Shown: piece by piece, positions 1-41,983 of the stretch
Position numbering within the stretch: position 1 is the stretch's first letter
Layout: each line of letters starts with the position of its first letter
Assembly: GCF_006345805.1 (NCBI RefSeq)
Contig: NC_043023.1
Coordinates: 4,712,001 to 4,776,000 of the forward strand
Reading direction: 5' to 3'
Length of the DNA: 64,000 nucleotides
From: Octopus sinensis
Lineage: Eukaryota
The notes under the pieces: model-generated
Seen by the model: only the letters and a program-made list of their open reading frames with translations
Told to the model about the DNA's origin: nothing
The model's database searches: none
Program-made: the position numbers and the translations under genes

Positions 1-1750
1 GGTTGATGGTGGTGGTGATGGTGGTGGTGGTAATGGTGGTGGGTGGTGGTGGTGATGGTTGTGGTGGTGATGGTGGTGGTTGATGGCGGTGGTGATGGTG
101 AGGGTGGGTTTGGTGGTGGTGATGGTGGGGGGGTGGTGATGGTGATGGTGGTGGTGATGATGGTGGTGGTGATGGTGGTGATGGTGATGGTGGTGGTGAT
201 GGTGGTGATGGTGATGGTGGTGGTTGGGGGTGGTGGTGGTGGATGGTGATGGTGAATGGTGGGTTGGTGATGGTGATGGTGGTTTTGGTGGTGGTGTGTG
301 ATGGTGGTGGTGATGGTGATGTGGGGTGGTGGTGGTGGTGATGGTTGATGGTGGGGTGGTGGTGGTGGTGGTGGTGATGTGATGGTGTGGGGTTGTGGTG
401 GTGGTGATGGTGATGGTGTGTGGTGGTGGTGGTGGTGGTGGTGGTGGTTGATGGTGGTGGTTGTGGTGGTGATGGTGATGGTGGTGGTGGTGATGGTGGG
501 GGTGGTGTGTGGGTGGGGGGGGTGGTGGTGGTGGTGGTGATGGTGGTTTTGGTGGTGGTGGTGATGGTGATGGTGGTGGTGATGGTGGTGGTGGTGGTGG
601 TGATGGTGGTTGTGTGGTGGTGGATGGTGGGTGGTGGTGATGGTGATGGTGGTGGTGGTGGTTGTGGTGATGGTGGTGTTGGTGGTGTGGTGATGGTGAT
701 GGTGGTGGTGATGGTGGTGGTGGTGGTGGTGGTGGTGGTGGTGGTGGTGGTGATGGTGGTGGTGGTGGTGGTGATGGTGGTGGTGGTGGTGGTGATGGTG
801 ATGGTGGTGGTGGTAATGGTGGTGGTGGTGGGGGTGATGGTTTTGGTGGTGGTGGTGATGGTGATGGTAATGGTGGTGGTGATGGTGATGGTGGTGGTGG
901 TGATGGTGGTGGTGGTGGTGGTGGTGGTGATGGTGGTGGTGGTGATGGTGATGGTGGTGGTGAGTGGTGGTGGTGGTGTGGTGATGGTGGTGGGTGGTGG
1001 TGGGTTGGGGTGGGTGGTGTGATGATGGTGGTTGTGGTGGTGGTGGTGGTGGTGGTGATGGGTTTTTTGGTGGTGGTGGTGATGGTGATGGTGGTGGTGA
1101 TGGTGGTGGTGGTAATGGTGGTGGTGGTGGTGGTTGTGTGGTGGTGGTGGTGATGGTGGTGTGGTGATGGTGGTGGTGATGGTGGTGGTGATGGCGGTGG
1201 TGATGGTGATGGTGGTTTTGGTGGTGGTGATGGTGGTGGTGATGGTGATGGTGGTGGTGATGGTGATGGTGGTGGTGATGGTGGTGGTGATGGTGATGGT
1301 GGTGGTGATGGTGATGGTGGTGATGGTGAGTGGGTGGGGGATGGTGGTGTGATGGTGTTGATGGTGATGGTGGTGGTGGTAAAGTGGTGGTGATGGTGGT
1401 GGTGGTGGTGGTGATGATGGTTGGTGTGGTGGTGGTGGTGGTGGTGGTGATGGTGGTGGTGATGGTGGTGGTGGTGATGGGATGGTGGTGTGGATGGTGG
1501 GGGTGGTGGTGGTGATGGTGGTGTGATGGTGGTGGTGGTGAGGGTGAGGGGGGGGGGGGGGGTGGGGGGGGGGGGGGTGGGGGGGTGGTGATGGTGTGTT
1601 GTGGGGTTGGGATGTGGGGTGATGGTGGTAATGGTGATGGTGATGGTGGTGGCGATGGTGGTGGTGATGGTGGTGGTGGTGAATAGTAACGATGATGATG
1701 GTGATGGTGGTGGTGATGGTAGTAGTAGTGGTGGTGGTAGTAGTGGTGAT
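1..1750. repeat. Degenerate (GGT/GAT)n trinucleotide tract
   Basis: Continuous ggt/gat triplets; the Val/Met/Gly ORFs are its read-through. Confidence 0.95.
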
Positions 1751-2139
1751 GGTGATGGTGGTGAATAGTAACGATGGTAATGGTCATGGTTGTAGTCGTG
1801 GTGGTAATGATGGTGGTGGTGATGGTGATGGTGTGGTGGTGGTATGTGTTTTTTTGTGTAATACGTGGCATCACTACCACCACTGACATACTACCGCTAT
1901 ACCACCGCAACCACTGCATCAGCGACCACCATCACCAATAACACCGCCTGTCTTACACCAACACGACCAGGACCTCCACCACCAGCAGCAGCAGCAGCAG
2001 CATCGGCTACATGAAAACCAAGAAGAAGACCGACAAGAGAAAGCAACAGCCAAACCGTACAGCACCAAAAGCCAACGACGTGGGCGAGAACGAGGCGGGG
2101 CGGAAGTGTGGAGATGCATAAATAGCGAATGCCTGGTGT

Positions 2140-2253
2140 GTGTGTGTGTGTGTTTATCTATCTATATATATATATATATTATATAATATATATATATATA
2201 CAGGTATGCACATATATGTATGTATATGTATGTATATATATTATATTGTTATA

Positions 2254-14100: not shown

Positions 14101-14565
14101 CTTTGGAAACCGTATTAATTGTTGCCAGGTCAACATAGGGCAAATACTATAATGAGCGATATCCAAAGGCAAACCACTGGGTGTGGTTAAAAAGAGATGA
14201 TGACAAGCAATGGCTAGAAGGATATCGAGTGAAGCCTAGTAGTCAAGCATTCTAGCAAGTGGGGCCTCATGTCAGTGAGGGGAGCCAGGTGCGCAATAAT
14301 ACGTCGAATGGAAGGCCCCGAAATGGTTAGCATTTTCCTCTGATGACACCATAAGCCTGTCGGTGTTCGAAACTTTCAACTGGTAACTTTTGTGTCTGGT
14401 AAGTTGCTTGTAAATGATGGTTCGAATAGTAATAGGTCGTAGTACCTGGCCTGACGGAGCATCGTTTAGAGTGGACAGGAGAGTCCCGTGGTTGTAAGGT
14501 CGTATACAGTCACCCGAGGGGTAAAAGAAGTACAACGTTTGAGGAGAAATCCTCAGAAAGGAATA

Positions 14566-16590
14566 CAGGCATACCTCGTTTTACGTAACCCCGATTTGCG
14601 AAACCTCATCTTTACGAATTGTAGATGAAAAACGAAAAAAAATGGTTACCATGGCAACGAGCGTCACTTCCGGTCTGGCAACACCTGTTACCTCGAGCGA
14701 ACGCCTGCAACTGCTTTTTGGATTTGAAGTGTGTCAGTGCCCACCCGACTTCCCTCACGTTAGTCCGCGTCTTATATTCCTTTATTACACTATCTTTTTA
14801 AAATTCTTTACGCATCTTTATTATTTTTTAATAATCTTGTGAAAGAATTCTGAGATGCAAAATAAGGATAAGAAGAAACGTAAAGCAATTACTTTAGAAA
14901 TAAAATACGAATTGATTAAACAACACGAAAAAGGTGCAACTGTTAAAGATTTGTCAAAAATAAAAATTGATATGGCTCCTTCATCTGTTTGTATCATCTT
15001 GAAGTAAAAGGAAGATTATTTCGATAAAGTTAAAGGCAGTCATTCTCTAAATTCAACTTGGTTACGAAGAAAAGATAATGAAAGTTTAATTTCACGCGCA
15101 GAAAACCTTTTGACAGCTTGGATTAACAATCAAATTCATAGGCTTCGTATGCCACTTTGTCAGGCTATAATTTGCTGTAAAGCAATTTCCTCCTTTTTTA
15201 ACTCGCTTAAGGGTGCATCAGATGAGTCAAATGAAACATGTGTTGTGAGTAATGGTTGGTTCGATCGTTTCAAACAACGAGCAAATCTACACAATGTGAA
15301 GCTCCAAGGAGAATCGTCTAGCGCAGATCAAAAAACTGCAGAAACTTTTCCTCGCCAATTAGATTTTGTTGGAGAAGAAGGCTTTATACCGTCTCAAATA
15401 TTTTGGAAACGAATGCCTTCAAAGACTGTTATTGCGAGAGAAGAATCTTCAATGCCAGGATTCAAAGCTGCAAAAGATAGGATGATATTGCTTCTGGGAG
15501 GAAATTGTGAGGAGGACTGCAAACTCAAACCCATGCTTATTTATCGATCTGAAAACCTCCGTGCTTTAAAAGGAATTGATTAGATTAAACTTCCTGTAAT
15601 CTGTAACAAAAAAGCTTGGGTGACAGGAACTCTATCTGAAGATTGGTTTTCTGATCACTTTGTTCTCAAAGTAGAAAAATATTGTAAGGATAAAAAAAAT
15701 TCCTTTCTCGATTCTTTTGAATGCCCCCAGTCATGCTGCATTTTAAAGCATCACCATCAAAATATTAATGTTGTTTTTTACCCTCAATACAACATTTAGC
15801 GTTTAAATCTTACAATCTTCATGTCACCTTTGGAAGATTCAACGAAGTGGCTGATAAAGAAAATGATCCTATGATTCGAGAATTTTGGAAGAGTTTCAAC
15901 ATCCTTGATGCAATAAAATTTACGAAGAAAGCATAGGATAAAATTGTCGTAAAAAATATGAAAGGAATTTGGAAAAATCTCTGCCCCAAATTAAAAGACG
16001 GTTTTGAAGGATTTGATTATCTTCGAGAAGGTCTTCAAAAAGAAACTGACGAAATCATAAATATTGCAAAGGAAATGAACTTTGAAATTCCACCTGAAGA
16101 TGTTAAAGAAGCTCTTTGGGTTAACAGTGATGATATCACAAATGACGACTTGCTAGAAATGGCGGAGGAGGAGGAGGAAGAAGAAGAAGAAGAAGAAGAA
16201 GAAGAAGAAGAAGAAGAAGAAGAAGAAGAAGAAGAAGAAGAAGAAGAAGAAGAAGAAGAAGAAGAAGAAGAAGAAGAAGAATCGTCTGAAAGATGCTTTT
16301 CTGCAAAAAAGCTAAATGCAGCATTTCTTCACATCGAGAAAGCTAATGGATTCTTTAAGCAGCAAGATAGCGATTTTGAAAGAAGCTCAATCTAATGCGA
16401 GGTCGTGCTTGTTATTGAGAAATCTATCGTGAAATGAAGCAGAAATCTTTTCAACAAACAACTTTAGATCATTTTTTAACGAAGAAAACTAAAGCAGACC
16501 AACCAACAAAACAAGAAGAAACTCAATGGATGGAATTTACATGCACTCAAGAGGCCCTGGTGACGACAGACCTGACGGATACGAATTAAA
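14566..16590 (+). mobile_element. Tigger/pogo DNA transposon, decayed, 3' TIR not seen
   Basis: TA|CAGGCATACCTCGTTTTA Tigger-type TIR; CENP-B-like HTH (KRKAITLEIKYELIKQHEKG, WFDRFKQRANL) and DDE_1 (KDRMILLLGGNC, LDFV, NAPSH) remnants with stops. Confidence 0.9.
16163..16279. repeat. (GAG)/(GAA)n tract inside the Tigger acidic tail
   Basis: Directly visible; in frame as poly-Glu. Confidence 0.95.
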
Positions 16591-17035: not shown

Positions 17036-17574
17036 ACTAGTGATGGCGACGTTATGCCTCCATTCACCTTCCCACGCAGACTCACACTCAACACAGAAAC
17101 CTACATTAAGTGCCTGGAGGAGGTAGTGCTACTCTGGGTCAAGAGGGTGGCTGCTGGAAGACCCTGTGTCTGGCAACGGGACTCTGCACTATGTTACACA
17201 AGCAGAAGAACCCGTCAGACAACTTCTGCGACCACATCACCCCTAACATCTGGCCACCTAACTCCCTAGACTGCAAACCTCGATTATTATGTGTGGGGCA
17301 CAGTTGACTGACAAAAATCCTTGTAACACCAAAAATGAACTGAAGGCAAGGATTTATCAACTTAAACAAGGAGACCATCCAGAAGAGTTGCAGGAGATTC
17401 CAATGTCGTCTGGAGGCCATAGTTGAAGCCAATGGCGATTCTATTGAATAAATTTACTCTTTAGTATTTCAAGATATTCTTATGTAATTTTGGTAAATAC
17501 ATTTGTTAAAATGTGATGTCAGTGTTATTTTCATTTTTGCGTAATTTAGACGACTGCTTATTCACCATACCCTG
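17036..17574 (+). mobile_element. Tc1/mariner (maT/DD37D-like) 3' fragment
   Basis: GDVMPPFTF...TYIKCLEEVVLLWVKRVAAGRPCVWQRDSA and IWPPNSLDCKP; ends in ...CCCTG|TA. Confidence 0.8.
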
Positions 17575-17632
17575 TACAATATATACGTACATACATACAT
17601 CATACATACACTACATACATACATACATCTAC

Positions 17633-17697
<65 letters not shown>

Positions 17698-17898
17698 TAT
17701 ATATATAAGTATATTAAGCAATAAAGGGTTTAGCAACGAATTGCCTTACCACATACCGAATTTAGAAATAGCAGTCAAAGGGTTATAGCTATTCTTCTAC
17801 TAAAAAGGGAGATCTCAGTAACAAAACAGCAATTGGAAGGCAGACACAAACAGTAGAGAGAATGAATTGACTGCAATCTGTCATACATTTTTAAGTTA

Positions 17899-18001
17899 TC
17901 TACGGACGTACGTTTCGAAATCATTTTTAGGAAAGCATAAGAATTAATATTAAATATTAAATAATCTATCTTACCGAAACTTCTTTTCTCTTCAGCGTAG
18001 A
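17899..18001 (-). ncRNA. Type I hammerhead ribozyme (family H1, inverted copy)
   Basis: Minus strand: UCUACG-CUGAAGA-GAAA...UUUC-GAAA-CGUACG-UC-CGUAGA. Confidence 0.85.
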
Positions 18002-18722
18002 AGACTATAATCATAAATGATTATATATTGATTTTTGAGATACTAGAAAGGCACCAACTCAACTCAGTATCAGAGCGAGCTAGATCCGCAACTAGTATCA
18101 CCGAATTCAATTTGTGAATGAAACGATTGTGTCACCAGCCCCTTCCCACCCACGCGTGTAGCCAAAACAAGATGCTGTGGTCATCTACTGAGATAAAATA
18201 TGGTTATCGTAATAATGAAGGGTGAATTAATTAATTTGGAATAATTATCAATTACACCAAGTAGTCTTCGGCTGTTTGTGTCTGCCTTCCAATTGCTGTT
18301 TTTTACTGAGATCTCCCTTTTTAGTAGAAGAAATAGCTATACCCTTTGACTGCTATTTCTAAATTCGGTATGTGGTAAGGCAATTCGTTGCTAAACCTTT
18401 ATTGCTTTATTTGCTTAGTATTCTTAAATTTTCCTCGAATGAGGCTTTTACATGCCGAAGACTACTTGGTGTAATTGATAATTATTCCAAATTAATTAAT
18501 TTCACCCTTCATTATTACGGATAACCATATTTTATCTCAGTAGATGACCACAGCATCTTGTTTTGGCTACACGCGGGTGGGAAGGGGCTAGTGATACAAT
18601 CGTTCATTCACAAATTGAATTCGGTGATACTAGTTGCGGATTCTAGCTCGCTCTTATACTGAGTTGAGTTGGTGCCTTCTAGTATCTCAAAATTCATATA
18701 TAATCATTTATGATTATAGTAT

Positions 18723-18829
18723 TCTACGCTGAAGAGAAAAGAAGTTTCGGTAAGATAGAATTATTTAATATTTAATATTTAATTCTTATGCTTTCCTAAA
18801 AACTTGATTTCGAAACGTACGTCCGTAGA
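18723..18829 (+). ncRNA. Type I hammerhead ribozyme (family H1)
   Basis: Helix I UCUACG/CGUAGA (6 bp); core CUGAAGA 18729-18735; long helix II closed by GAAA/UUUC; GAAA 18812-18815; palindromic ACGUACGU; GUC cleavage after 18823. Confidence 0.9.
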
Positions 18830-19317
18830 TAACTTAAAAATGTATGACAGATTGCAGTCAATTCATTCTCTCTTACCTGTTTGTGTCTGCCTTCCAATTG
18901 CTGTTTTTTTACTGAGATCTCCTTTTTAGTAGAAGAAATAGCTATAACCCTTTGACTGCTATTTCTAAATTCGTATGTGGTAAGGCAATTCGTTGCTAAA
19001 CCCTTTATTGCTTAGTATTACTTAAATTTCCTCGAATGAGGCTTTTACTGCCGAAGACTACTTGGTGTAATTGATAATTATTCCAAATTAATTAATTTCA
19101 CCCTTCATTATTACGGATAACCATATTTTCTCTCAGAGATGACCACAGCATCTTGTTTTGGCTACACGCGGTGGGAAGGGCTGGTGACACAATCGTTTCA
19201 TTCACAAATTGAATTCGGTGATACTAGTTGCGGATTCTAGCTCTCGCCTGATACTGAGTTGAGTTGGTGCCTTCTAGTATCTCAAATTCAATATATAATC
19301 ATTTATGATTATAGTAT

Positions 19318-19421
19318 TCTACGCTGAAGAGAAAGAAGTTCGGTAAGATAGAATTATTTAATATTTAATATTTAATTCTTATGCTTTCCTAAAAACTTGA
19401 TTTCGAACGTACGTCCGTAGA
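19318..19421 (+). ncRNA. Type I hammerhead ribozyme (family H1, second direct copy)
   Basis: Same fold but reads GAAC instead of GAAAC. Neighbouring homopolymers are also one base shorter, so this may be a consensus error. Confidence 0.7.
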
Positions 19422-19776
19422 TAACTTAAAAATGTATGACAGATTGCAGTCAATTCATTCTTCTTACCTGTTTGTGTCTGCCTTCCAATTGCTGTTTTTT
19501 ACTGAGATCTCCCTTTTTAGTAGAAAATAGCTATACCCTTTGACTGCTATTTCAAATCGGTATGTGGTAAGGCAATTCGTTGCTAAACCCTTATTGCTTA
19601 GTATTACTAAATTTTCCTCGAATGAGGCTTTTACATGCCGACGACTACTTGGGTAATTGATAATTATTCCAAATTAATTAATTTCACCCTTCATTATTAC
19701 GGATATATATCTATATATATATATATAATATATATAATTATATATATATATATATAATATATATATATATATATAA

Positions 19777-19808
<32 letters not shown>

Positions 19809-19819
19809 GTGTGTGTGTG

Positions 19820-20030
19820 CATATGATCTTTTGTTTCTTTCAACCATTGGACTACAGCCATGCTGGGGTACCGCTTTAACGAGTTTCAGCCGAACGAATC
19901 GACCCCGGTACTTAATTATTAAAGCCCTGCATTTATTCTATCGGTCTTTGCCTGAACCGCAAAATTTCGGGGCCACAAACAAACCAACACCGGTTATCAA
20001 GCGGTTGGGAAGCAAATTTCTTACCACACA
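19820..20030 (-). mobile_element. CORE-type SINE family A, diverged and deleted
   Basis: Tail and a short piece of head are recognisable. Confidence 0.6.
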
Positions 20031-20349
20031 GTAATGGTTACGATTTACACACACACGCACACATGCACATTAAAACAGGAATGAAAAGGCAAACGATTCG
20101 GCAAGACGTTTAATTCAGCTATATAATAAAAAATTATACATTTGTTTTCATTTCTTTTCATTTCTGTTTTAATCTATACCTACCTACTCAAGGACAAGCC
20201 ACTTCTCGCCGCTTTGGAAAGGCGGTTACAAAATCACGTTCAACTGCAATTCAAACTGGAATGTTAGTGGCATACTCAGAGTGCATACCTATTAGTTTGA
20301 GTCACCTTGACGAAAACCCCTCATGTCTTTTATATATATATATATATTA

Positions 20350-22714: not shown

Positions 22715-22910
22715 TAATTCGACCGCGTGTGTATCGTTGGCGATTTTCTTCCTCCATCTTCCCTTCCTTGGACCTTTCCTTTTTCTATGTTTCTGACGAA
22801 GAGCTCCGCTCGAAACGTTAAGTCCTCCTTCTTTCTTTCCTTTCCGGAGCATCCAACAACACTATACTTGTTCCACGTCCTCGCTTTGTTGTGTTTTCAT
22901 GTTTGGATTA
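22715..22910 (+). mobile_element. Penelope-type 3' tail (pLTR) with minimal hammerhead (family H2)
   Basis: GTTT-CTGACGA-A-GAGC-TCC-GCTC-GAAA-CG-TT-AAGT at 22789-22823; related to the tail of the Penelope element at 38077-38330; followed by (TA)n. Confidence 0.7.
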
Positions 22911-23985: not shown

Positions 23986-24886
23986 CATGGTGGTATCAAA
24001 AAAGGTTCCCGGACTAGTTCTATAGCGCGCCAACAATGGCTGCGGGCGTAATGAAAGCTACCAGTGACCATCACGAGGCACTGGGCCAAGTGACATCACT
24101 GGGTTTACTTTACAAGTTGTGAAATTTATGTTTTGGTGATCACACATATTCTGTAGTCTGTGATTTTGCATGGACAAGACATTGGAACAAAGAGCCAACG
24201 TGAAGTTGTACGTTAAACGTCGGAAATCTGCTACACAGACATTGAGCATGCTTCGGCAAGCTTTCGGCGAAGAGCGAAGAAGTAATGGGTCGTACACAAT
24301 GTTTCGAGTGGCACGGACGCTTCAAAAGCGGAAGAACAGTTGACGACCGATCTGGAAGATCTTCCACATGCGTCACCACTGAAAATGTGGAGAAAATTCA
24401 TGAGGTTGTGCATGAGGATCGTCGGTGGACAATCAACAACATTGCTGGTGTTGTTGATCTATTGCATGGGTCCGTGTAGGCAACTTCAACGTCCGCGAAG
24501 AATTGAATTCCTCACGACGACAGTACATCCTGTCACCGAGCTCTCCTCACTCGTGAATCTCTCGTCAAAAACAAGGTATGGCTTCTGCACTCGGCCTATT
24601 CCACAGATTTTGCACCTGCAGACTTTCATCTCTTCTCCAAGACGAAAAAGCAACTCAAAGGTCGTCGTTTTAACACTGTTGACGAGATAGAGAGCAAATT
24701 GCAGAAGGTTCTCGACTTGCTTACGGAAAACGACCTCCAGGCCGGATTCCAAAAGTGACAGGAATGCTGGGATAGGTGTATTGCTGCGCATGGTGAGTAT
24801 TTCGAAGGAACTGATGTTAAAACTAAGGTAAATAAGTTATTTTTTATTAAACATAACCAGTTCGGAAACTTTTTGAGAGCACATCG
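23986..24886 (+). mobile_element. Internally deleted mariner (irritans-like)
   Basis: Imperfect TIRs (TATCAAAAAAGGTTCCCGGACT versus CTCAAAAAGTTTCCGAACT) with TA flanks; HTH WHGRFKSGRTVDDRSGRSST; YSTDFAPADFHLF. Confidence 0.85.
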
Positions 24887-24897
24887 TACATACAAAA

Positions 24898-24941
<44 letters not shown>

Positions 24942-25312
24942 CCATCCATCCATCCATCCATCCATCCACATACATACATACATACATACATACATACATA
25001 CATACATACATACATACATACGTACGTACGTACATACATAATAAATACATACGTACGTACATACATACATACATACATACACACACACATCCATCCGTCC
25101 ATACATACATACAGACATACATACATGTGTACATACATACATACATAAATACATACATACGTACATACATATATGCAAACATACATAAATGCATAAATAC
25201 ATAGAAACATACATACGTACGTACATACATGCATACATACATATATACATAAATACATACATACAGTCGTACGTACGTAAATACATACATGCACACATAC
25301 ATACATACACAC

Positions 25313-25343
<31 letters not shown>

Positions 25344-25388
25344 CATACATACATACATACATACATACATACATACGTGCATACATGA

Positions 25389-25419
<31 letters not shown>

Positions 25420-25476
25420 CGTACGTGCATACATACATACATACATACATACATACATACATACATACATACATGA

Positions 25477-25507
<31 letters not shown>

Positions 25508-25530
25508 CATACATACATACATACACACGT
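24887..25530. repeat. (CATA)n/(CA)n microsatellite
   Basis: Directly visible. Confidence 0.95.
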
Positions 25531-26289
25531 ACGTACGAATGCACTCGCTTCTGCATAGTTTCAGTCCAGCAAACTCACTCGCCAAGCAACGGTCGACCGG
25601 GGGTTATAATAAAAAGACGCTTGCTCAAGGTGCCGCGCAAAGGAACTGAATGCGAAATCGCGAGGCTCTAAAGTGAAGTCATTAACCACACAACCGTACA
25701 CCACGCGTGCGGTTGTGTGCGCGTGTACAAATTGTATGGTAAGAATTTCATAAACCCTGCAGATACAGCGTGTTGCGTCATTTAAACGATGATGATAACT
25801 TTATTACATTTCTCTATTCTATGGCTTTCAGTTTTGTTTTTCCTGACGATATCAGCATATCACACACACACACACACACCACACACACACACACACATAC
25901 ACACACACTTACAGAAACAAACACACCACACGCACTCAAACACGCTCGTGTGCATGGTAGGGATATGAGAGAAGCGAGCTGTGTGATATGATATGATATA
26001 TTGGGCGTAGGAGGTGAGTGTTTTCTAGATGCAGACGATACTGTGTGTGCGATGTGTGATACAACTCTGAACAATGGTTGTGTGTTGACGCCGACGATAT
26101 CAGATGAAGTCGATATCGATATTATTAGCTCCTTTCCACACGCAAACCGCCCCGCCACCCCCACCCCCTAGCGACAGCTGAAGGCAAAATATCACAGATC
26201 TTTGTGATTTGGTGTTGCAGTTTGTGTAGGATGTATTAAACAGGGAATCGTGGGATAAAAAACCATTTATCATGTGGTGGTGATCTTGT

Positions 26290-26301
26290 GCACTGAAGGC
26301 T

Positions 26302-26336
<35 letters not shown>

Positions 26337-26839
26337 TGGCGGTGGCGGTGGTGGCGGTGGCGGCGGTGGTAGTCGTACAGCTGAAAGTGGTGGTAGTCGT
26401 GGTGGTGGGGAAGTCGTGGTGGTGACGGTTGTGGCGGCGGCTGCGGCGGTTGTTGTGGGGCAGTGGTGGTGGTGGTGGTGAAGGCAGTTGTGGTGGTGGG
26501 GGTAGTCGCGGTGGCGGTTGTGATGTTGGAGGTGGTGGTGGTGGTGGCGGCAGCGGTGGTGATGGCTGTGATGGTGGTGGTGGTGGTGGTGGTGATGGAA
26601 GAGTGCGAATGCGTGGGAGTATGTGTGCGAGGGGGTACTGTCAGGGGAAAGGGGTAACAAGAAAGCGGGAGTGAGGTGAGATAGAGGTGAAAGAGAGAGA
26701 GAGAGAGAGAGAGAGAAAGAAAGAAAGAAAGAAGAAAGAAAGAAAGAAAGAAAGAAGAGAGAAAGAAAGAAAGAGAGAAAGAAAGAAAGAAAGGAAGAAA
26801 GGAAGGAAGAAAGAGAGAAAGAAAAAGAGAAAGAAAGAG

Positions 26840-26870
<31 letters not shown>

Positions 26871-27600
26871 GACATCTAGGAAAGATAGAGAATAAGAGAG
26901 TGCAAGAGAGAGAATATGCAGAGAAAGATGAGGAAAAATAGATTGTGAGGGAAAGAGGAAGACAGACAGAGAAAGAAGGGAAAAAAGAAAGAAGACATCA
27001 GGAAAGTAAGATAAGAGAAAAGAGAGAGAGAGAGAGAGAGTAAGAGAAAGAGAGAAAATATAAGAGAAAGAGTGAGACAGAGAGTGTATAAGAGAAAGTG
27101 AAAGTGAGAGAGAGTACAGGAGAAAGGGTGGGAGAGAGAGAGAGAGAGAGAGATTTTGGATCCAATGATAGATTGGATAAAGTGAAAGGCGAAGAAAAAG
27201 GTTATGATGAATCAATAAGCAATGTGTGTAATAGAGAGAAGGAGAGGTGAAAGTGAGGTAGAGAGAGAGGGGGAGAGAGACAGAGACAGAGAGAGACAAG
27301 CAGTCAGACAGACAGACAGGTAGAAAGCAAGAGCAAGGGAAAATGAGTGAGAAAGACAGAGATGAAAAGAGGGAGACAAATTAGAGACAGAGATAGGAGG
27401 GTTATACTGAGGAATAGAGAGAGTGAGAGAGATGGAGAGAGAGGAGGAGGATATAGAAAGAGAACTACATAATGAGAGGGGGGTAAACGAAAGAGAGAAG
27501 TGTAAGAAAGAGGGAAAAGAAAGAGAAAGAATGCAAGTAGTAGAAAGAGTAGCAGAGTAGTGGGAGTGATAGTGAAAGTGAGAAAGTTGAAAGGTTTTCA
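26290..27600. repeat. (GGT/GGC)n followed by (GA)n/(GAAA)n purine-rich low complexity
   Basis: Directly visible; source of the poly-Pro/His/Thr and Ser/Leu/Phe ORFs. Confidence 0.9.
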
Positions 27601-27634
27601 ATAAAGTTTGTTGCAGAATATTTTCAAGTTATAT

Positions 27635-27661
27635 GTGTGTGAATGTATGTATGTATGTATG

Positions 27662-27692
<31 letters not shown>

Positions 27693-29310
27693 TGCTGTAT
27701 GTAATGTATGTGTGTGTGTATGTATGTATGTATGTATGTATGTATGTATGTATGTATTAATGCATGTAATGTATGTATGTGGTATGTAGTATGTAAATGT
27801 ATGTGTGTATATGTGTATGTTATGTATGTATGTATGTATGTATGTGTGTGTGTATGTATGTATGTATGTAAATTGTGTATGTTGTGTATGTTGTGTATTT
27901 ATGGTGATGTGTATGTATGTGTATTTGTGTATGATTTGTATGTATGTCGTGGTGTTGAATGTATGTATGTATGTATGTATGTATGTATGTATGTGTGTAT
28001 GTATGTGTGTATGTGTGTATGTATGTATGTATGTATGTGTGTGTGTTGTATGTATGGTATGTATGTATGTATGTGGGTGTGTATGTATGTATTATGTATG
28101 TATGTATGTATGTATGTGATGTGTGTATGTATGTTGTATGTGGTGTATGTATTATGTATGTATGTATGTGTATGTATGTATGTATGTTGTGTGTGTATGT
28201 ATGTATTATGTATGTATGTATGTATGTATGTATGTATGTATGTATGTATGTATGTTATGTGTATGTATGCATGTATGTATGTATGTGTGTATGTATGTAT
28301 GTATGTATGTGTGTATATGTGTATGTATGTATGTATGTTGTATGTATGTATGTGTGTGTGTATGTATGTATGTATGTATGTGTGTATGTGTGTATGTTTG
28401 TATGTATGTATGTGTGTGTGTATGTATGTGTGTATGTGTGTATGTATGTATGTATGTATGTATGTATGTATGTATGTATGTGTGTATGTATGTTATGTGT
28501 GTAGTATGTATGTTGTATGTATGTATGTATGTTGGTGTGTATGTATGTATGTATGTATGATGTATGTGTGATGTGTGTTGTGTATGTATGTATGTATGTA
28601 TGTATGTATGATGTATGTATGTATGTGTGTGTGTATGTGTGTGTGTATGTGTGATTGTATGTATGTATGTATGTATGTATGTCTGTGTGTGTTGTATGTA
28701 TGTATGTATGTATGTATGTGTATGTGTGTGTGTATGTATATGTATGTGGTGTGTGTGTGTGTATGTATGTATGATGTAGGTGTATGTATGTATGTATGTA
28801 TGTGTATGTATGTGTGTATGTGTGTGTATGTATGTATGTATGTATGTATGTGTGTATGTTGTATGTATGTATGTTGTGTATGTATGTATGTATGCATGCA
28901 AGTATGTATGTATGTATGTATGTATGTATGTATGTATGTATATGTATGTGTGTGAATGTATGTATGTATGTATGTATGTATTATGCAAATATGTATATAT
29001 GCATGCAAGTATGTATGTATGTATATATGTATGCATGTGTTTATGTATATATGTATGTCAGTATATATGTAAATATGTATGCATGCATGCAAGTATATAT
29101 GTATGTATGTATGTACGCAAGTATGTATGTATGTAAGCATCCAAGTATGTATATATGTATGAATGTATACATGTATGTATGCATGCATGTATATATGCAT
29201 GCATGTATGTATTATGTATGTATGTATGTATACAAGTATGTATGTATGTATGTATGTATGTATGTATGCATACAAGTATGTATGTATGTATGTATGTATG
29301 TATGTATGTA
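27635..29310. repeat. Long degenerate (TATG)n tract
   Basis: Directly visible, ~1.7 kb. Confidence 0.95.
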
Positions 29311-29311
29311 T

Positions 29312-29750
29312 GTTTATGTCAGGTCTCTTTCGAGTGCTACTGGTAACATGTAACCCAGTACAACTTGTTGCATAGTTGGGTCGTCGGCGAGGAGGGTGTT
29401 TATTGGACACCCTGCGGGATGAAAAACAAACCCGTCAAAGGGCGGAGGAACTCTTGAGAATCAATGGCCATCCAATAAATGTCTTAAGGCTGTATCATGC
29501 GCGGGGACATAGAAATAATCGGACTGATTACACGATCGTGCAGTTAAATCATTGGGAGTGAAGGACTCCTAGCCTTTGTTAGGGCATCCTTCTAGGAGAA
29601 GGTAACTCAGGTAACTGGGATTGCTCCGACATAAAACCTGCGGCTCAGTGGTTACCGATGATGTTGACTTGTTCTTCTTTTCGGATTATGGCTGCTGTTG
29701 CTTAGTGAGTGGGATTGACTCAGTGCACAGCCTTTCCTCACTTTAAAAAA
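29312..29750 (+). repeat. Unclassified repeat, possibly a LINE 5' UTR
   Basis: Contains CTAGGAGAAGGTAACTC...AAAACC, a motif reminiscent of RTE-type 5' UTRs; no ORF. Confidence 0.3.
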
Positions 29751-32195: not shown

Positions 32196-32305
32196 CAATT
32201 CAGATGAATATGGTACTTAAGCTGAAGCACCAGAATTTATTATCCATACAATTTCGAAGTAAGGTGATTAAAATCAAAATAAGCAACAAGGATATCCAGA
32301 GATAA

Positions 32306-32397
32306 TGCAGTACGATCGTTTCATGTAACTCCATTTAATTGAACAATGCAATCCTTTCATTACATCAATTTAAAATGTAGAGCAATCTTCAGCTGCA
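32306..32397 (-). ncRNA. Type I hammerhead ribozyme (family H4)
   Basis: UGCAG-CUGAAGA-long helix II-GAAA-CGAUCG-UA-CUGCA; palindromic ACGAUCGU; GUA triplet; first helix II pair U.U. Confidence 0.75.
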
Positions 32398-34229
32398 AAA
32401 AGGCATAGAATTTAATTAAATTAGAACAGATGGATACATTAGTATAATTATACCTACAATCTCCAAGTTAAGGAGACAGACAAAGAATATGTTGTACCTA
32501 CAACAGCATAGCCTTAACTAAAATTTTCAAGAAGACACTGCCTGTCACTGATTTTTTGTCTTTTTATGGGGTCATTTATAATTTATAAACTAGTTTATCA
32601 AATCCCTTGTATATTTAAGGCTGAGAGAAACAGAGGTAGTATCTGTTTGGGGTAGAGTTGAGGGAGTAGACAGACATTCTAGATGGTATAGTCATAAAAA
32701 TCAAGATTTATTAGAAGCAATGTCATGAAGTTTAGTAAAGGAAAACTTAAAACAAGATGTTAAGGGGGTCGTCGTCCACTAGCAGACTATCGATAATGAA
32801 GCAGGGGAAGTCTTATCATGCAGCACTATAGTTATATACTTTAAAACAATGTTGCTATATTATATACAGTTAAAGTTTAGGGTTATTCAAAAGATTATTA
32901 AGAAGAATATTGTAACAAGAAGATAGAACTTTATGAATACTTTTGAGTATATATCAAACTTTTACCACAATAGAGGAAGGAAAAGAAATTATATAGAAAT
33001 AGTTTAATATTTATACATATTGTATACTTAAATACTAACTCATCAGATGGTATCTATGAATATTGATTAATTGGTATATACTGGTATCTAATAAAGGAAT
33101 ATTGAGGTAAATGAACATGCTAGTTATATATTAATAAAATTTTAATCTAAGCAGTTTTTTTTTAATAAGTAGTGAATATATCAGTATAGTTTTATATAAG
33201 CTAAGTGTGAATTTATAGAGATACAAAAATTAGATTAATTTTATAAATAAAGAAAGGCTAATTATAAAATGAAATAAAATAATCAATGGCAGAACACCAT
33301 AGAAAAGGAATAAAATGGCTTAATTACTAATACTATGGTAAAGTATATGTAGCTTACTAACACCAATAGAGAAGATTTTTTAGAAAAAAAGTATAATAAT
33401 TCAAAATATATTAGACTAAAAATTATGTATTTACTTATTTAGCTAATATCTATAAAAGACTGATGTTTGGTATCGGCTAAAGGAATATTTAAGTTATGGA
33501 ACAATTCTATTTTACACTAATTTTATTTTTAATTTAGGGTTTTATTATAGGTTTAAGAAGTTGTTATTATTACTCCCTACATGATATTTATAGTTTCTTA
33601 GTGGTACTTGTTTAGAAGAGTTATTTATATAAAGTCCCTTATAAATACTAAGATCAGGAGGGTAGAGTCATTTAAGAAAGAGGAAAATCAAGTAATTTTT
33701 TAATGATCATTTCAAACAATATCATCAAACTGTATGAGTTTAAAATTTTAGGGTAATCACGAAGATTATTAAGAATGAAAATTTTAACAAAAGGATACCA
33801 CTTCTTTGAATATTATGAGTATATACCAAATTTTTACCACAATAGAGGGAGGAAAAGGAAATTGCAAAGAAATAGATTAATATTAATATAGATTAATAAT
33901 ATACTTATTACTTATCTAAAATATTAACTTATGGTTTCCATGGAAAATGATCAAATGGATTTTAACTAGTATTTAACTGAGGTTAAAGAACATGTTAACT
34001 ATATACTGATTTAATTAAAATTGAACTAATTTTAAGTTGTGGAGATACCGGTATTACTTTATATAAGCTGAGTATGAATTAATAGGGGTACAAGGATTAG
34101 ATTTATTTAAGGCTGCTATAAATGTAACAGTAACAACAATAATAAAATGATCAGTTAGCACTAAAAACTATAATGAAATAATAAAATATTCATACCTTAT
34201 TAACTCTAATAGCAAGTATTTATAGAAAA

Positions 34230-34450: not shown

Positions 34451-35414
34451 CATACATTGTGCCACCCGTACTTTTAAGTATTTTAAATAATAGCATTCCT
34501 AAATTTTCAAATCTTAATGTTTTGTAACCAAATAAGGAAATAATATACCATACTAGCTTTTATTTAACCTGCATAGATTATTAAGAAATTTTATAATATA
34601 AATAAATTTGAATAAAGTGAAATTAAAATCTTTTGAAACTTTCCAATATAGGATTGCATAAATTCCATATATCTAGTGAAATTATTAAGTTCATCTTGAT
34701 TACCTCCCTTCCATTACACTTTAAAATATCTTATAGGCTCTTGATATATGTGCTAATTGATAAGGTTTTTTTTTACAGATAATAAATATTATGTCTAGCA
34801 TATTCCTTTAATTTAACTCATTAATAAAAATAAATTACTATTTACTAACTAACTATAAATCTATATTAATAGAAATTGATATATATATTTTTATAAATAT
34901 GAAAAGAATTTATATACTCCCCATCTCTATATAAGATACTAAAATTTATTAGAATCCTTTAAAAAAAACTATCTAAAGGATATTTATTTAAAATCACAAG
35001 CAAGATTATGGCTGTCAAATGGTTAAGGGCATCAGAAATCTCTATTCACCCTACCCCACTAGCTTCAGCCTACTAACTTTGGCTAAAATACATTCAAATG
35101 TGCCAAAGTTAAATCCCTCATAAAATGGATGGATTTATGGCTCTGCCATTTGAACTACCCCTTCCTCTATCTATAAATAGAAAAAATTCTTGTTTGTCTC
35201 CACTGAACTTAATAAAAAACCCTCCCCATTGGTAAATCTAAATAACAAAGTGAACTCAGTGATGAAAAATCTGCCCATGAGGGAAGATCTTCTACTACCA
35301 TGTTCTTACTGATGAAATTCACCTCTCTGTTTATATATCTACCCTCTTTGTAATGTTGGCAAATGGAATAAGTATAAAAATAAACATTGTCAATCTAATT
35401 TTAAAAATTCCATA

Positions 35415-35502
35415 TGTGGCTGAAGAGTGCTCTACATTTTAAAACTGATATAATACTTACATTGTTTAATTAAATGAATTAGCATGAAACGCTTGTACTA
35501 CA
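35415..35502 (+). ncRNA. Type I hammerhead ribozyme (family H4, third copy)
   Basis: UGUGG-CUGAAGA-GUGCU...AGCAU-GAAA-CGCUUG-UA-CUACA; the downstream tail (GGATATCCTTGTTGCTTATTTTGAT) is shared with the 32.2 kb and 40.6 kb copies. Confidence 0.7.
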
Positions 35503-35574
35503 CTATCTTTGGATATCCTTGTTGCTTATTTTGATTATATAAATAGATATATAGATATAACTGAGAATGTGTGT

Positions 35575-36984: not shown

Positions 36985-37289
36985 TGGTTTCCGCTTCATC
37001 GGGGATATCTCCCTTTGCAGGATAAAGACGCCTTGATGGTGTCAAGCCTATCTGGCGACGTTATGTTCGCCTTGGGCTAATGCAACAGTAACACCCCCAC
37101 CACTCTGCCTGTCCCTAGCCATATTCAGATGGTTTAGTCCCTTATGTTATGGAGCAGTTCTGTCTATATCTCATTTGAGAATTATTATTGCTGTCGAACA
37201 GATTTTCGAAATCAGCAATGTATTTTGCTTGAAAATCTATATATAATATCCTGCAGAGTGAATTGTTCGTCGGGGAAGCGGCGGCCTAC

Positions 37290-37334
37290 CACACGTTGAT
37301 GATGGGCAATACACTTGAAACCTGGGTCCGTGTG
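37290..37334 (+). ncRNA. Hammerhead H3, second direct copy
   Basis: CACACG-UUGAUGA-UGGGCAAUACACUU-GAAA-CCUGGG-UC-CGUGUG. Confidence 0.65.
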
Positions 37335-37567
37335 TTTTTCCGCTTCATCGGGTTATCTCCCTTTGCAGGATAAAGACCCGTGAGGTGTCAAGCCTATCTG
37401 GCGACGTTGATGTCCCTGGGGCTAAATGCAACAGTAACCCCCCACCACCCTGCCTGTCCCTATCCATATTCAGATGGCTTAGTCCCTTATGTTATGGAGC
37501 AGTTACTGTCTATATCTCATTTAGAGAATTATTATTGCTATATATATATATATATACATACATGTAT

Positions 37568-40440: not shown

Positions 40441-40445
40441 TATCG

Positions 40446-40507
<62 letters not shown>

Positions 40508-40677
40508 TGTGTGCATCTATGCATATATATATGTATATATATGGGTTCAATAAAAATTTAGATTCAGATGCATATGGTACTTAAGTTGAGGCACCAGAAT
40601 TTAGTATGGTATTATCCATACAATTTCAAAATAAGGTGATTATAATCAAAATAAGCAACAAGGATATCCAGAGGTAA

Positions 40678-41879: not shown

Positions 41880-41983
41880 CTGGGTGACTTTTAGGCCACC
41901 CTGTATGCAAAACGTGTGTATGTATGTATGTAGAGAGAGAGAGAGATACACTTATACATGTATGTATGTATGTATGTATGTAT

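What the first reader, a model, noticed from the sequence alone, without database searches (positions are those of the whole stretch)
17715..19703. Candidate retrozyme array: ~595-nt ORF-less tandem unit with one complete type I hammerhead per unit
Seen: about 2.4 direct copies of a ~595-nt unit (starts 18273, 18878, 19469), preceded by a 558-nt inverted copy and embedded between (TA)n tracts. Each unit folds as UCUACG-CUGAAGA-[~76-nt helix II]-GAAA-CGUACG-UC/CGUAGA, with a full consensus core, a 6-bp helix I, a GUC cleavage site and a self-complementary helix III (ACGUACGU). Known: type I hammerheads with palindromic helix III occur in Penelope-like element pLTRs, in newt satellite 2 and in metazoan non-LTR retrozymes, where tandem transcripts are cut to monomers and circularised. 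Inference: a transcript would be cut after 18823 and 19415 to release a ~592-nt monomer or circRNA copied by a PLE reverse transcriptase. The unit is longer than the few-hundred-nt retrozyme units I recall, and I do not know of a description of this family in cephalopods.
Basis: partly seen in the sequence, partly recalled or inferred. Interest (0 to 1): 0.92.

Follow-up and report, generated by a model that had tools for sequence, protein, structure and literature searches.

The report
Octopus hammerhead retrozyme repeat array
A short non-coding repeat in an octopus-like genome carries a self-cutting "hammerhead" RNA motif and is arranged the way Penelope-type jumping genes insert, so it is most likely a new family of a known class of parasitic circular-RNA elements (retrozymes), not a new kind of system.

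Summary
Window 17706-19705 carries about 2.4 head-to-tail copies of a ~595-nt ORF-less unit. An inverted, nearly full copy precedes them, and (TA)n tracts lie on both sides. Two copies carry a complete type I hammerhead (HHR): full core, 6-bp helix I, G10.1-C11.1, GUC site and an ACGUACGU palindrome as helix III. The third has GAAC instead of GAAAC and is defective as assembled. A strict descriptor is expected 0.003 times per shuffled 64-kb window. Rfam finds no hammerhead, probably because helix II carries a 72-76-nt arm. The context supports the retrozyme/Penelope (PLE) reading. The copies lie head-to-head, with the 3' ends of the HHR-sense strand pointing outward into (TA)n. Both arms run through the cleavage site. 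This fits cDNA primed from both sides of a break on circular or multimeric RNA. The window also holds a decayed PLE RT/GIY-YIG gene, PLE-type minimal-HHR 3' ends abutting (TA)n, and a second dispersed family with the same HHR design. A sampled Octopus sinensis locus holds a further example. Transposon and SINE matches place the window in an Octopus-like genome. Transcription, cleavage and circularisation are untested, and no other copy of this unit was found. Verdict: a new member of a known kind, of moderate interest.

The parts
17615..17705 (.). Left (TA)n microsatellite, one half of the presumed target
   Evidence: TRF; sequence
17706..18272 (-). Inverted copy of the unit (about 0.95 unit). 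The HHR-sense strand is the minus strand. Its outer (left) end is the 3'-ward end of the sense RNA, and it crosses the unit junction and the HHR site once.
   Evidence: blastn (17855-18272 at 96%; 17706-17852 at 95%); the repeat finder (I1-I12); alignment
17899..18001 (-). Complete type I hammerhead of the inverted copy, with a 72-nt helix II. Predicted cleavage after the C at 17905 on the minus strand.
   Evidence: Strict descriptor; pattern. The helix II arm is not predicted to fold as assembled.
18273..18876 (+). Direct copy 1 (604 nt). It starts 54 nt downstream of the position equivalent to the cleavage site, and shares 1 nt (C18272) with the end of the inverted copy.
18723..18829 (+). 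Complete type I hammerhead: UCUACG / CUGAAGA / 76-nt helix II (GAAA:UUUC base, internal loop, AAGUUU:AAACUU, AU-rich apex with a (UAUUUAA)x3 repeat at 18762-18783) / GAAA / CGUACG / U-C / CGUAGA. Predicted cleavage after 18823.
   Evidence: The MFE fold forms helix I and helix II and leaves the core open.
18877..19467 (+). Direct copy 2 (591 nt)
19318..19421 (+). Hammerhead copy that is defective as assembled: GAAC in place of GAAAC (the A15.1 register is lost) and 1-nt deletions in helix II. The nominal cleavage site is after 19415.
   Evidence: (fails the descriptor)
19468..19705 (+). Direct copy 3, a partial copy of about 0.4 unit. It ends in ...CGGATA with 'ATA' microhomology to the (TA)n tract and stops before its HHR.
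19703..19775 (.). Right (TA)n microsatellite, the other half of the presumed target, followed by (GT)n at 19777-19819
   Evidence: TRF

Best explanation
This is an insertion of a ~595-nt, ORF-less, non-autonomous retroelement of the metazoan non-LTR retrozyme class in an Octopus-like genome.

Shown from sequence: each unit encodes a type I hammerhead of the canonical metazoan build whose helix III is the 8-nt palindrome ACGUACGU. The copies lie head-to-head (one inverted copy, then 2.4 tandem copies), with the 3' ends of the HHR-sense strand pointing outward into a (TA)n microsatellite. Both arms read through the ribozyme cleavage site.

Inferred mechanism: master copies are transcribed as multimers. 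The hammerheads cut after GUC, most efficiently as dimers formed through the palindromic helix III. [quoted passage not shown] A Penelope-like element's GIY-YIG endonuclease and reverse transcriptase cut a (TA)n tract. Both DNA ends then prime cDNA synthesis on circular (or uncleaved multimeric) HHR-sense RNA. This gives tandem copies on one side and an inverted copy on the other, joined in the middle at 18272/18273.
For: 1. The repeat anatomy is confirmed.

2. The HHR is complete in 2 copies. The strict descriptor is expected 0.0033 times per shuffled window, and 0 of 20000 unit shuffles gave a hit. Helix I of 6 bp, helix II base of 4 bp with G10.1-C11.1, and helix III of 2 bp plus a palindromic GUAC loop match the canonical metazoan type I architecture in PMC4209133.

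3. A dimer is favoured. Cofolding gives -49.6 kcal/mol against 2 x -18.6 for monomers, with an 8-bp intermolecular helix III.

4. There are no conserved ORFs and no protein homologues. GC is 34.6%, and the circular monomer is more structured than shuffles (z = -3.0, 1 of 150).

5. The architecture matches the PLE hallmarks in PMC8557442: partial tandems, an inverted copy adjacent at the 5' end, and (TA)n bias. The arms are not mirror images: the left arm ends at unit position ~182 and the right arm starts at position 1. This argues against a simple foldback.

6. In both arms the unit coordinate falls from the outer end inward. That is what cDNA primed from both DNA ends on HHR-sense RNA would give, and HHR-antisense RNA could not give it.

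7. PLEs with HHRs that target (TA)n are present in the same window. There is an RT/GIY-YIG remnant at 39058-40524(-) with a CX4CX2C linker. There are also min-HHR-type boxes at 22785-22827, 38177-38220, 51478-51521 and 58389-58435, each followed by (TA)n within 85-200 nt.

8. The same unusual HHR design (CUGANGA, then 58-76 nt, then GAAACGNNCGUH) recurs in an unrelated dispersed family at 32198-32460, 35419-35539 and 40562-40827. One helix I pair there shows a compensatory change, and the 3' ends lie at TA-rich microsatellites. The pattern gives 4 hits against 0.00 expected. It also recurs in O. sinensis locus L004, again with an inverted partial copy between (TA)n tracts.

9. Literature: metazoan retrozymes are tandem type I HHR repeats that co-exist with PLEs (PMC7229834). 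Reported lengths are 51-972 bp, and most families have at most 7 units (10.64898/2026.07.22.740005).
Against: Rfam (RF00163 and the other hammerhead models) gives no hit at gathering score or at E<=10. The same is true of the other octopus HHR variants, so this is weak evidence against.

The helix II arm is long, AU-rich and only marginally structured. In the inverted copy it does not fold as assembled. The canonical loop1-loop2 contact cannot be recognised, so catalytic competence is unproven.

One of the three HHRs is broken as assembled.

All copies come from one locus, probably from one event, so there is no independent conservation or covariation for this family's HHR. No other copy was found in the 64-kb window, in 127 kb of sampled Octopus chromosomes, in JGI metagenomes or in IMG/VR.

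The array's ends do not coincide with the cleavage site, and the variable CT-rich junction (18866-18877) could instead mark template jumps between linear RNAs. No autonomous partner sharing sequence with the unit was identified. There are no RNA data.
Confidence: 0.75

Rival explanations
1. It is a PLE-dependent, SINE-like non-autonomous element copied from linear RNA. The tandem copies arise by template jumping from the 5' end of one RNA to the 3' end of another, as in PLE pseudo-LTR formation. The hammerhead is an inherited pLTR passenger, and circular RNA plays no part.
For: The direct array starts exactly at a unit junction (18273 is equivalent to 18878 and 19469). The three junctions differ in a short CT-rich stretch (ctctcttacc, cttcttacc, ctctctac), as untemplated or slipped bases at template jumps would. 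PLEs themselves make tandems without known circles (PMC8558442 is not the source; see PMC8557442). The dispersed family 2 and the L004 element have defined 3' ends like ordinary target-primed (TPRT) elements. The HHR lies ~54 nt from the unit's 3' end, which resembles PLE HHRs 'near the 3' ends' (PMC8557442).
Against: The outer ends of the two arms (unit positions ~143 and ~247) are neither the same nor at the putative 3' terminus. That fits internal priming on an endless (circular or multimeric) template better than priming at a defined 3' end. The CT-rich variation may be assembly noise, because most differences between copies are 1-nt indels.
Confidence: 0.14
2. It is an ordinary low-copy minisatellite or segmental rearrangement produced at the DNA level (unequal exchange, inverted duplication). 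The hammerhead-like string is a chance match or a dead relic with no role.
For: There are only 2.4 + 0.95 copies. There is no other copy in the 64 kb or in 127 kb of Octopus DNA. Rfam is silent. A strict-descriptor rate of 0.0033 per 64 kb still predicts on the order of a hundred chance hits in a ~2.8-Gb genome (extrapolated).
Against: The motif has features beyond the descriptor: G10.1-C11.1, a palindromic helix III, and the 6-bp/4-bp geometry. The same design recurs in two unrelated repeat families and in another Octopus genome. The non-mirror head-to-head arrangement inside (TA)n, with HHR-sense 3' ends outward, is what PLE-type retrotransposition gives, not what unequal exchange gives.
Confidence: 0.05
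3. It is an assembly artefact: a noisy long-read assembly has duplicated or inverted a single copy at a microsatellite.
For: The copies differ mainly by 1-nt indels, many of them in homopolymers. D1 against the inverted copy shows 6 substitutions and 10 indel events, 8 of them homopolymer-length. This is typical of unpolished long reads. PLE tandem/inverted structures are known to trouble assemblies (PMC8557442).
Against: The arms are not mirror-symmetric about 18272/18273, unlike foldback chimeras. The three junction-spanning copies carry distinct substitutions. The structure is the expected biological one, and a similar one is present in the independent O. sinensis assembly.
Confidence: 0.05

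Closest known systems
Metazoan non-LTR retrozymes (Cervera & de la Pena, NAR 2020, PMC7229834; Li, Clavereau & Pollet 2026 preprint 10.64898/2026.07.22.740005)
   Same: Short head-to-tail arrays of ORF-less, low-GC units, each with a type I hammerhead. Array sizes are small. They co-exist with PLEs, and PLE mobilisation through circular RNA has been proposed. The unit length of 595 nt lies inside the 51-972 bp range reported in 2026.
   Different: The unit is longer than the 170-400 nt first described. Helix II carries a 72-76-nt arm in place of a small loop 2, so the loop1-loop2 contact is not recognisable and Rfam does not see it. An adjacent inverted copy is present, which the two papers read here do not mention. 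The host clade (cephalopods) is not covered by those studies. There is no expression evidence here.
Hammerheads of Penelope-like element pseudo-LTRs (min-HHRs; Cervera & de la Pena, MBE 2014, PMC4209133) and PLE insertion architecture (Craig et al., MBE 2021, PMC8557442)
   Same: Type I topology with a palindromic helix III, implying action as a dimer. The insertion consists of partial tandems plus an inverted copy at the 5' side, with a bias for (TA)n.
   Different: There is no RT/GIY-YIG ORF in the unit. Its HHR is of the canonical build (6-bp helix I, 4-bp helix II base, no extra base between positions 9 and 10.1) and not minimal. True min-HHR-type boxes do occur elsewhere in the window, at PLE 3' ends.
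Newt/salamander satellite 2 and Schistosoma Sm-alpha hammerhead repeats
   Same: Genomic tandem or dispersed repeats that encode type I HHRs with a weak, palindromic helix III. They cleave poorly as monomers and well as dimers (PMC7229834).
   Different: Those families have ~330-bp units, very high copy number, a short helix II and conserved loop-loop contacts. Here the locus is low-copy and helix II is extended.
Plant LTR retrozymes (Cervera et al., Genome Biol 2016, PMC4918200)
   Same: Non-autonomous and ORF-less, processed by HHRs into 600-1000-nt circular RNAs that serve as retrotransposition intermediates.
   Different: The plant elements carry type III HHRs inside LTRs, have a PBS, a PPT and 4-bp TSDs, and depend on Gypsy. 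None of these applies here.

Membership tests
Hammerhead ribozyme, type I (canonical metazoan architecture) | Invariant core: C3 U4 G5 A6 N7 G8 A9, G12 A13 A14, the A15.1-U16.1 pair, and H17 at the cleavage site | tested here: met
   CUGAAGA ... GAAA-CGUACG-U-C is present in 18723-18829(+) and 17899-18001(-). It is not met in 19318-19421, which has GAAC.
Hammerhead ribozyme, type I (canonical metazoan architecture) | Three helices with helix I open. Helix I is about 6 bp, helix II about 4 bp closed by G10.1-C11.1, and helix III is 1-2 bp with a 2-4-nt palindromic loop (PMC4209133). | tested here: met
   UCUACG:CGUAGA gives 6 bp. GAAA:UUUC gives 4 bp with G10.1-C11.1. Helix III is A-U and C-G plus a GUAC loop, or an 8-bp intermolecular ACGUACGU duplex.
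Hammerhead ribozyme, type I (canonical metazoan architecture) | Tertiary contact between loop 1 and loop 2 | tested here: inconclusive
   Internal loops sit at the expected distances: after 6 bp in helix I (AU/UA, then AGU:ACU) and after 4 bp in helix II. However, loop 2 is replaced by a 68-nt arm, and the conserved contact nucleotides could not be identified.
Hammerhead ribozyme, type I (canonical metazoan architecture) | Match to the curated covariance models (Rfam RF00163 and related hammerhead models) | tested here: not met
   There is no hammerhead hit at gathering score or at E<=10 on 17400-20100. The other octopus variants are also missed. The long helix II insertion is the likely cause, but this was not proven.
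Hammerhead ribozyme, type I (canonical metazoan architecture) | Self-cleavage at H17 | not testable with these tools
   This needs in vitro transcription of monomer and dimer constructs.
Hammerhead ribozyme, type I (canonical metazoan architecture) | Helices maintained by covariation across independent family members | tested here: inconclusive
   No independent copy of this unit was found. In the look-alike family 2, helix I shows one compensatory and one one-sided change in 3 copies. This is not significant with n = 3.
Metazoan non-LTR retrozyme | Head-to-tail tandem repeats of a short non-coding unit, without LTRs, and with GC below 50% | tested here: met
   There are 2.4 direct copies of ~595 nt. 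The longest ORF is 79 aa and is not conserved. GC is 34.6%. A formal PBS/PPT search was not done.
Metazoan non-LTR retrozyme | One type I HHR per unit, so that a multimeric transcript is cut into unit-length monomers | tested here: met
   The sites after 18823 and 19415 are 592 nt apart. The second core is defective as assembled.
Metazoan non-LTR retrozyme | Expression as linear and circular monomer RNAs | not testable with these tools
   No transcriptome data were accessible. The ORF-based look-up in Logan/ENA found nothing.
Metazoan non-LTR retrozyme | Co-existence with autonomous PLEs carrying HHRs | tested here: met
   The window holds a PLE RT/GIY-YIG remnant at 39058-40524(-) and min-HHR-type 3' ends next to (TA)n. 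O. vulgaris has 31 PLE families listed as active (PMC13282606).
Metazoan non-LTR retrozyme | Dispersed multi-copy family in the genome | tested here: inconclusive
   This is the only locus in the 64 kb, and there is none in 127 kb of sampled Octopus chromosomes. Whole genomes could not be searched.
Autonomous Penelope-like element | ORF encoding an RT and a GIY-YIG endonuclease | tested here: not met
   The unit has no such ORF. It therefore shares the insertion style of a PLE but is not itself a PLE.
Plant LTR retrozyme | Type III HHRs within direct LTRs | tested here: not met
   The HHR is type I (helix I is open), and no LTRs flank a central region.
Viroid-like / deltavirus-like RNA replicon | RNA-only replicon, usually with ribozymes in both polarities | tested here: not met
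   The element is DNA-encoded within a chromosome context. No ribozyme was found on the opposite polarity by descriptor or by Rfam.

The most novel reading that the evidence does not exclude
Octopus genomes may harbour a lineage-specific hammerhead architecture that standard models (Rfam) do not see. It has a canonical core and helices I and III, but helix II carries a 58-76-nt arm. It is used by several unrelated PLE-dependent non-autonomous families. This array would then be a natural footprint of retrozyme integration: cDNAs primed from both ends of a (TA)n break, each running through the ribozyme site, and so copied from circular or uncleaved multimeric RNA by PLE machinery. That would be direct structural support for a mobilisation route that has so far rested on co-occurrence and pLTR similarity.
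Probability: 0.5. Interest if true: 0.6.

Novelty: new member of a known kind. Interest (0 to 1): 0.45.

Why it matters
Retrozymes are a recently recognised source of abundant circular RNAs in animals, and how they move is still inferred and not demonstrated. This locus adds a host clade (cephalopods) for which I found no retrozyme description.

It also shows that hammerheads with a long helix II arm escape the Rfam models used in genome annotation, so counts such as the 235 hits reported in giant squid may be underestimates.

The insertion geometry (head-to-head copies in (TA)n, each reading through the cleavage site) ties a retrozyme to the PLE style of integration and to an endless RNA template. 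This gives concrete predictions that can be tested with octopus genome assemblies and RNA-seq. It does not reveal a new kind of system.

Tried and rejected
1. Rfam at gathering score on the whole window, and at E<=10 on the locus, gave no hammerhead. A whole-window E<=10 scan was swamped by microsatellite matches to miRNA models and was uninformative.

2. TRF cannot report a 595-nt period, because its limit is 500.

3. Exact-pattern scans of JGI metagenome contigs and IMG/VR for the 3' half of the HHR gave 0 hits.

4. I tried to reach other genomic or transcript copies through the longest unit ORF (79 aa) in the 5.8-billion-protein collection. There were no hits.

5. The PLE endonuclease ORF retrieved only 45-50% identical proteins from one ENA assembly (ERZ26696836). 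Their contigs (L001, L002) are not closely related to the window and show no Rfam hammerhead.

6. I looked for sequence similarity between the unit and the PLE remnant, family 2 and the min-HHR 3' ends. There is none beyond the ribozyme core.

7. I sampled 127 kb of O. bimaculoides and O. sinensis chromosomes. There was no copy of the unit.

8. The relaxed-descriptor hits at 51502-51661(-) and at L007 3327-3449 were treated as chance, given an expectation of 0.22 per window.

9. A foldback assembly artefact and a terminal-inverted-repeat (TIR) DNA transposon were considered for the window array. Both were rejected because the arms are not mirror-symmetric and tandem junctions are present. For the O. 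sinensis L004 element, a foldback or MITE-like reading cannot be excluded, because its arms are mirror-symmetric.

10. All long ORFs in the window except the transposase and PLE remnants are microsatellite translations.
Full report
OBSERVATION

blastn of the first unit against the window gives direct copies at 18273-18876 (the reference), 18878-19467 (94.6% identical) and 19469-19705 (92.4%). It also gives an inverted copy in two pieces, 17855-18272 (96%) and 17706-17852 (95%). Nothing else in the 64 kb matches. The repeat finder shows start-to-start spacings of 586-605 nt and numerous inverted pairs between 17711-18275 and the direct copies. The array therefore holds 2.4 direct copies plus a 567-nt (0.95 unit) inverted copy. 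TRF confirms (TA)n at 17615-17707 and 19703-19775, followed by (GT)n. TRF's 500-nt period limit explains why it does not list the array itself. The longest ORF in the locus is 79 aa. It is broken in the other copies and has no relative among 5.8 billion proteins.

THE HAMMERHEAD

Copy D1 reads UCUACG-CUGAAGA-[76 nt]-GAAA-CGUACG-U-C/CGUAGA. All invariant core positions are present, along with G10.1-C11.1, A15.1-U16.1 and a GUC site. The topology is type I.

A strict descriptor hits only 18723-18829(+) and 17899-18001(-) in the window. It required 6/6 bp in helix I, CUGANGA, 4/4 bp at the base of helix II, GAAA, two pairs in helix III, and H17. It is expected 0.0033 times per dinucleotide-shuffled window, and none of 20000 shuffles of the unit produced it. 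The unconstrained MFE fold of 18715-18840 forms helix I and helix II and leaves the core open.

Helix I (6 bp, then an internal loop), helix II (4 bp, then an internal loop) and helix III (2 bp plus the palindromic GUAC loop) match the canonical metazoan type I architecture. That architecture is described as I = 6 bp, II = 4 bp, III = 1-2 bp with a 2-4-nt palindromic loop, acting as a dimer (PMC4209133). Cofolding two copies gives -49.6 kcal/mol against -37.2 for two monomers, through an 8-bp ACGUACGU duplex.

WEAK POINTS OF THE HAMMERHEAD

- The third motif (19318-19421) has GAAC for GAAAC and fails the descriptor.
- The 72-76-nt helix II arm is AU-rich, contains a (UAUUUAA)x3 repeat, and is only modestly more stable than shuffles in D1 (z = -2.4). 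In the inverted copy as assembled it is not more stable than shuffles (z = +0.5).
- Rfam reports no hammerhead at gathering score or at E<=10. Rfam also misses the other octopus variants described below, so its silence carries little weight.
- The 592-nt cleavage-to-cleavage monomer, folded as a circle, is more stable than shuffles (-132.8 against -115.2 +/- 5.8 kcal/mol; z = -3.0).

ARCHITECTURE AND WHAT IT IMPLIES

The HHR-sense strand is the minus strand in 17706-18272 and the plus strand in 18273-19705. The copies are therefore head-to-head, with their sense 3' ends pointing outward into the two (TA)n tracts.

Tracing unit coordinates gives the following. In the left arm, going from 17706 inward, the unit position falls from ~143 through the unit junction to ~182. 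In the right arm, going from 19705 inward, it falls from ~247 through two unit junctions to 1.

That is the pattern expected if the two 3'-OH ends of a staggered break each primed cDNA synthesis on HHR-sense RNA and the products were joined in the middle (18272/18273, with 1 nt shared). The 'twin priming' label is my inference. It cannot be produced from HHR-antisense RNA.

Both arms read through the ribozyme cleavage site, once on the left and twice on the right. The template was therefore circularised or uncleaved multimeric RNA. The arms are not mirror images, which argues against a foldback assembly chimera or a DNA-level palindromic duplication.

The structure is the one described as typical of PLE insertions: partial tandems, often an inverted 5'-truncated copy adjacent at the 5' end, and a bias for (TA)n. 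The mechanism behind that structure is still unknown (PMC8557442).

Differences between copies are dominated by 1-nt indels. D1 against the inverted copy is 95.8% identical, with 6 substitutions and 10 indel events, 8 of them homopolymer-length. This suggests assembly noise on top of a possibly young insertion.

CONTEXT IN THE WINDOW

1. A decayed PLE lies on the minus strand.
   - ORF 39096-39686 has a weak GIY-YIG match (Pfam E = 1e-3, below the curated cut-off) and a CX4CX2C linker before the GIY-YIG motif.
   - ORF 40033-40524 carries RT-like motifs.
   - Homologues 45-50% identical confirm the family.
   - About 870 nt downstream lies CUGUUGA-A-GAGC-GUAG-GCUC-GAAA-CG-U-U. It has the extra base between positions 9 and 10.1, G10.1-C11.1 and a palindromic 15.2-16.2, all typical of PLE min-HHRs (PMC4209133), but its core carries A6>U. 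A (TA)n tract follows it.
   - Related boxes lie at 22785-22827 (canonical CUGACGA core), 51478-51521 and 58389-58435. Each is followed by (TA)n within 85-200 nt.

2. A second, unrelated family occurs at 32198-32460(-), 40562-40827(-) and, 5'-truncated, at 35419-35539(+).
   - It carries UGCAG-CUGAAGA-[58-63 nt]-GAAA-CGAUCG-U-A/CUGCA. This is the same design, again with an 8-nt palindrome.
   - One copy has UGUGG/CUACA in helix I, which is a compensatory C-G to U-A change plus an A-U to G-U change.
   - All three copies end next to TA-rich microsatellites on the sense 3' side.
   - The combined pattern CTGANRA-N50-80-GAAACGNNCGTH has 4 hits in the window against 0.00 expected.

3. In every HHR-bearing element examined, the HHR-sense strand is the strand whose 3' end abuts the microsatellite.

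ORGANISM AND AN INDEPENDENT EXAMPLE

A Tigger-like DDE ORF (47376-47852) finds Octopus bimaculoides and O. sinensis proteins as best hits, at 71-79% identity. SINE-like repeats in the window match an O. sinensis locus at up to 92-94%. The window is therefore from an Octopus-like cephalopod.

The 127 kb of Octopus chromosome sampled around those genes contained no copy of the 595-nt unit. O. sinensis locus L004 does hold another element with the same HHR design: UUCCUC-CUGAUGA-[58 nt with a GGGGACAUU:AAUGUACCCC stem]-GAAA-CGGCCG-U-A. This ~600-nt direct copy is preceded on its 5' side by an inverted copy of its 3' ~320 nt. The whole lies between (TG)n/(TA)n and (TA)n. Because its arms are mirror-symmetric, a foldback or MITE-like origin cannot be excluded for that element.

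COMPARISON WITH WHAT IS KNOWN

Metazoan non-LTR retrozymes are tandem, ORF-less, low-GC repeats with type I HHRs. They are expressed as ~170-400-nt linear and circular RNAs, co-exist with PLEs, and are proposed to be copied from circles by PLE RT (PMC7229834). A 2026 preprint extends lengths to 51-972 bp, finds that most families have at most 7 units, and argues they derive from PLE pLTRs (10.64898/2026.07.22.740005).

The present unit fits all the sequence criteria. Its length is not exceptional. What differs is the long helix II arm, the adjacent inverted copy and the host clade.

I found no paper that describes retrozymes or PLE hammerheads in cephalopods. The giant squid genome paper lists 235 Rfam hammerhead_1 hits without analysing them (PMC6962438). 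PLEs are annotated in O. vulgaris (PMC13282606).

VERDICT

The locus is most likely a retrozyme-class, PLE-mobilised non-autonomous element (confidence 0.75).

The rivals are:
- A linear-RNA, SINE-like mode of copying (0.14).
- A DNA-level repeat with a chance or dead motif (0.05).
- An assembly artefact (0.05).

Transcription, cleavage, circularisation, genome-wide copy number and the identity of the autonomous partner remain untested. This is a new member of a known kind, with a hammerhead variant that standard models miss. Interest is moderate (0.45).

Noticed in passing
window 32198-32460(-), 40562-40827(-), 35419-35539(+); HHR motifs at 32306-32397(-), 40678-40764(-) and 35414-35503(+): A second, dispersed repeat family (82-88% identical copies) carries a type I HHR of the same design as the array: CUGAAGA, a 58-63-nt helix II, GAAA, the palindrome ACGAUCGU and GUA. 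Between copies, helix I shows one compensatory change and one one-sided change. One copy has a core mutation (CUGAAAA). All copies end next to TA-rich microsatellites, and one is 5'-truncated.
   Followed up: partly
window 39058-40524(-): A decayed Penelope-like element. It consists of an RT fragment (ORF 40033-40524) and a GIY-YIG endonuclease with a CX4CX2C linker (ORF 39096-39686). A CT-rich low-complexity insert lies in the 3' region. The best protein relatives are 45-50% identical, from ENA assembly ERZ26696836.
   Followed up: partly
window 22785-22827(+), 38177-38220(-), 51478-51521(+), 58389-58435(+): Conserved boxes ...CUG(NN)GA-A-GAGC-(3-4 nt)-GCUC-GAAA-CG-U-U... resemble PLE minimal hammerheads, with an extra base between positions 9 and 10.1, G10.1-C11.1 and a palindromic 15.2-16.2. 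Only the 22.8-kb copy has the canonical CUGANGA core; two have U at position 6. Each is followed by (TA)n within 85-200 nt, as for 3' ends of PLE copies.
   Followed up: partly
L004 (O. sinensis CM016868.1) about 900-2000, minus strand; a second motif at 2085-2176(-): An independent HHR element of the same design (palindrome ACGGCCGU), with an inverted copy of its 3' ~320 nt on its 5' side, lies between (TA)n tracts. A degenerate HHR-like motif lies 597 nt upstream in a neighbouring element. The arms are mirror-symmetric, so a foldback or MITE-like origin is not excluded.
   Followed up: partly
whole window: The loose half-core pattern CTGANGA-N6-36-GAAA occurs 18 times against 2.8 expected from shuffles. 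Most hits were not examined individually.
   Followed up: no
window 17706-19705: Copies of the unit differ mainly by 1-nt indels, often in homopolymers. For example, D1, D2 and D3 each lack a different single base in ...AGTATTACTTAAATTTTCC.... This suggests unpolished long-read noise, so single-base calls such as GAAC at 19405 are unreliable.
   Followed up: partly
window 15110-15583(+) and 46084-48578(+): Tigger/pogo-type DNA transposon remnants (HTH_Tnp_Tc5 and DDE_1). The second is 81-84% identical at the DNA level to O. sinensis and O. bimaculoides loci. This helped to place the window in an Octopus-like genome.
   Followed up: yes
window 37038-37504; 42650-43420; many sites matching L004 12189-12603: Other repeats are present. 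One pair of direct copies lies ~345 nt apart. A ~401-nt tandem duplication is embedded in (TA/CA)-rich sequence. An abundant ~400-nt SINE-like element has at least 7 copies in the window. None shows an HHR core.
   Followed up: no
L006 (O. bimaculoides) 14160-14620(+): A ~460-bp segment lies between (TA)n and a compound microsatellite. It contains GGAAACGTACGTA, the same palindrome as the array's helix III, but has no canonical CUGANGA upstream. It may be a decayed relative.
   Followed up: no
window 24600-29400, 41900-43500 and elsewhere: All ORFs of 120-400 aa in these regions are translations of compound microsatellites (TG/TA/CT-rich). They have no Pfam match and are not genes.
   Followed up: yes
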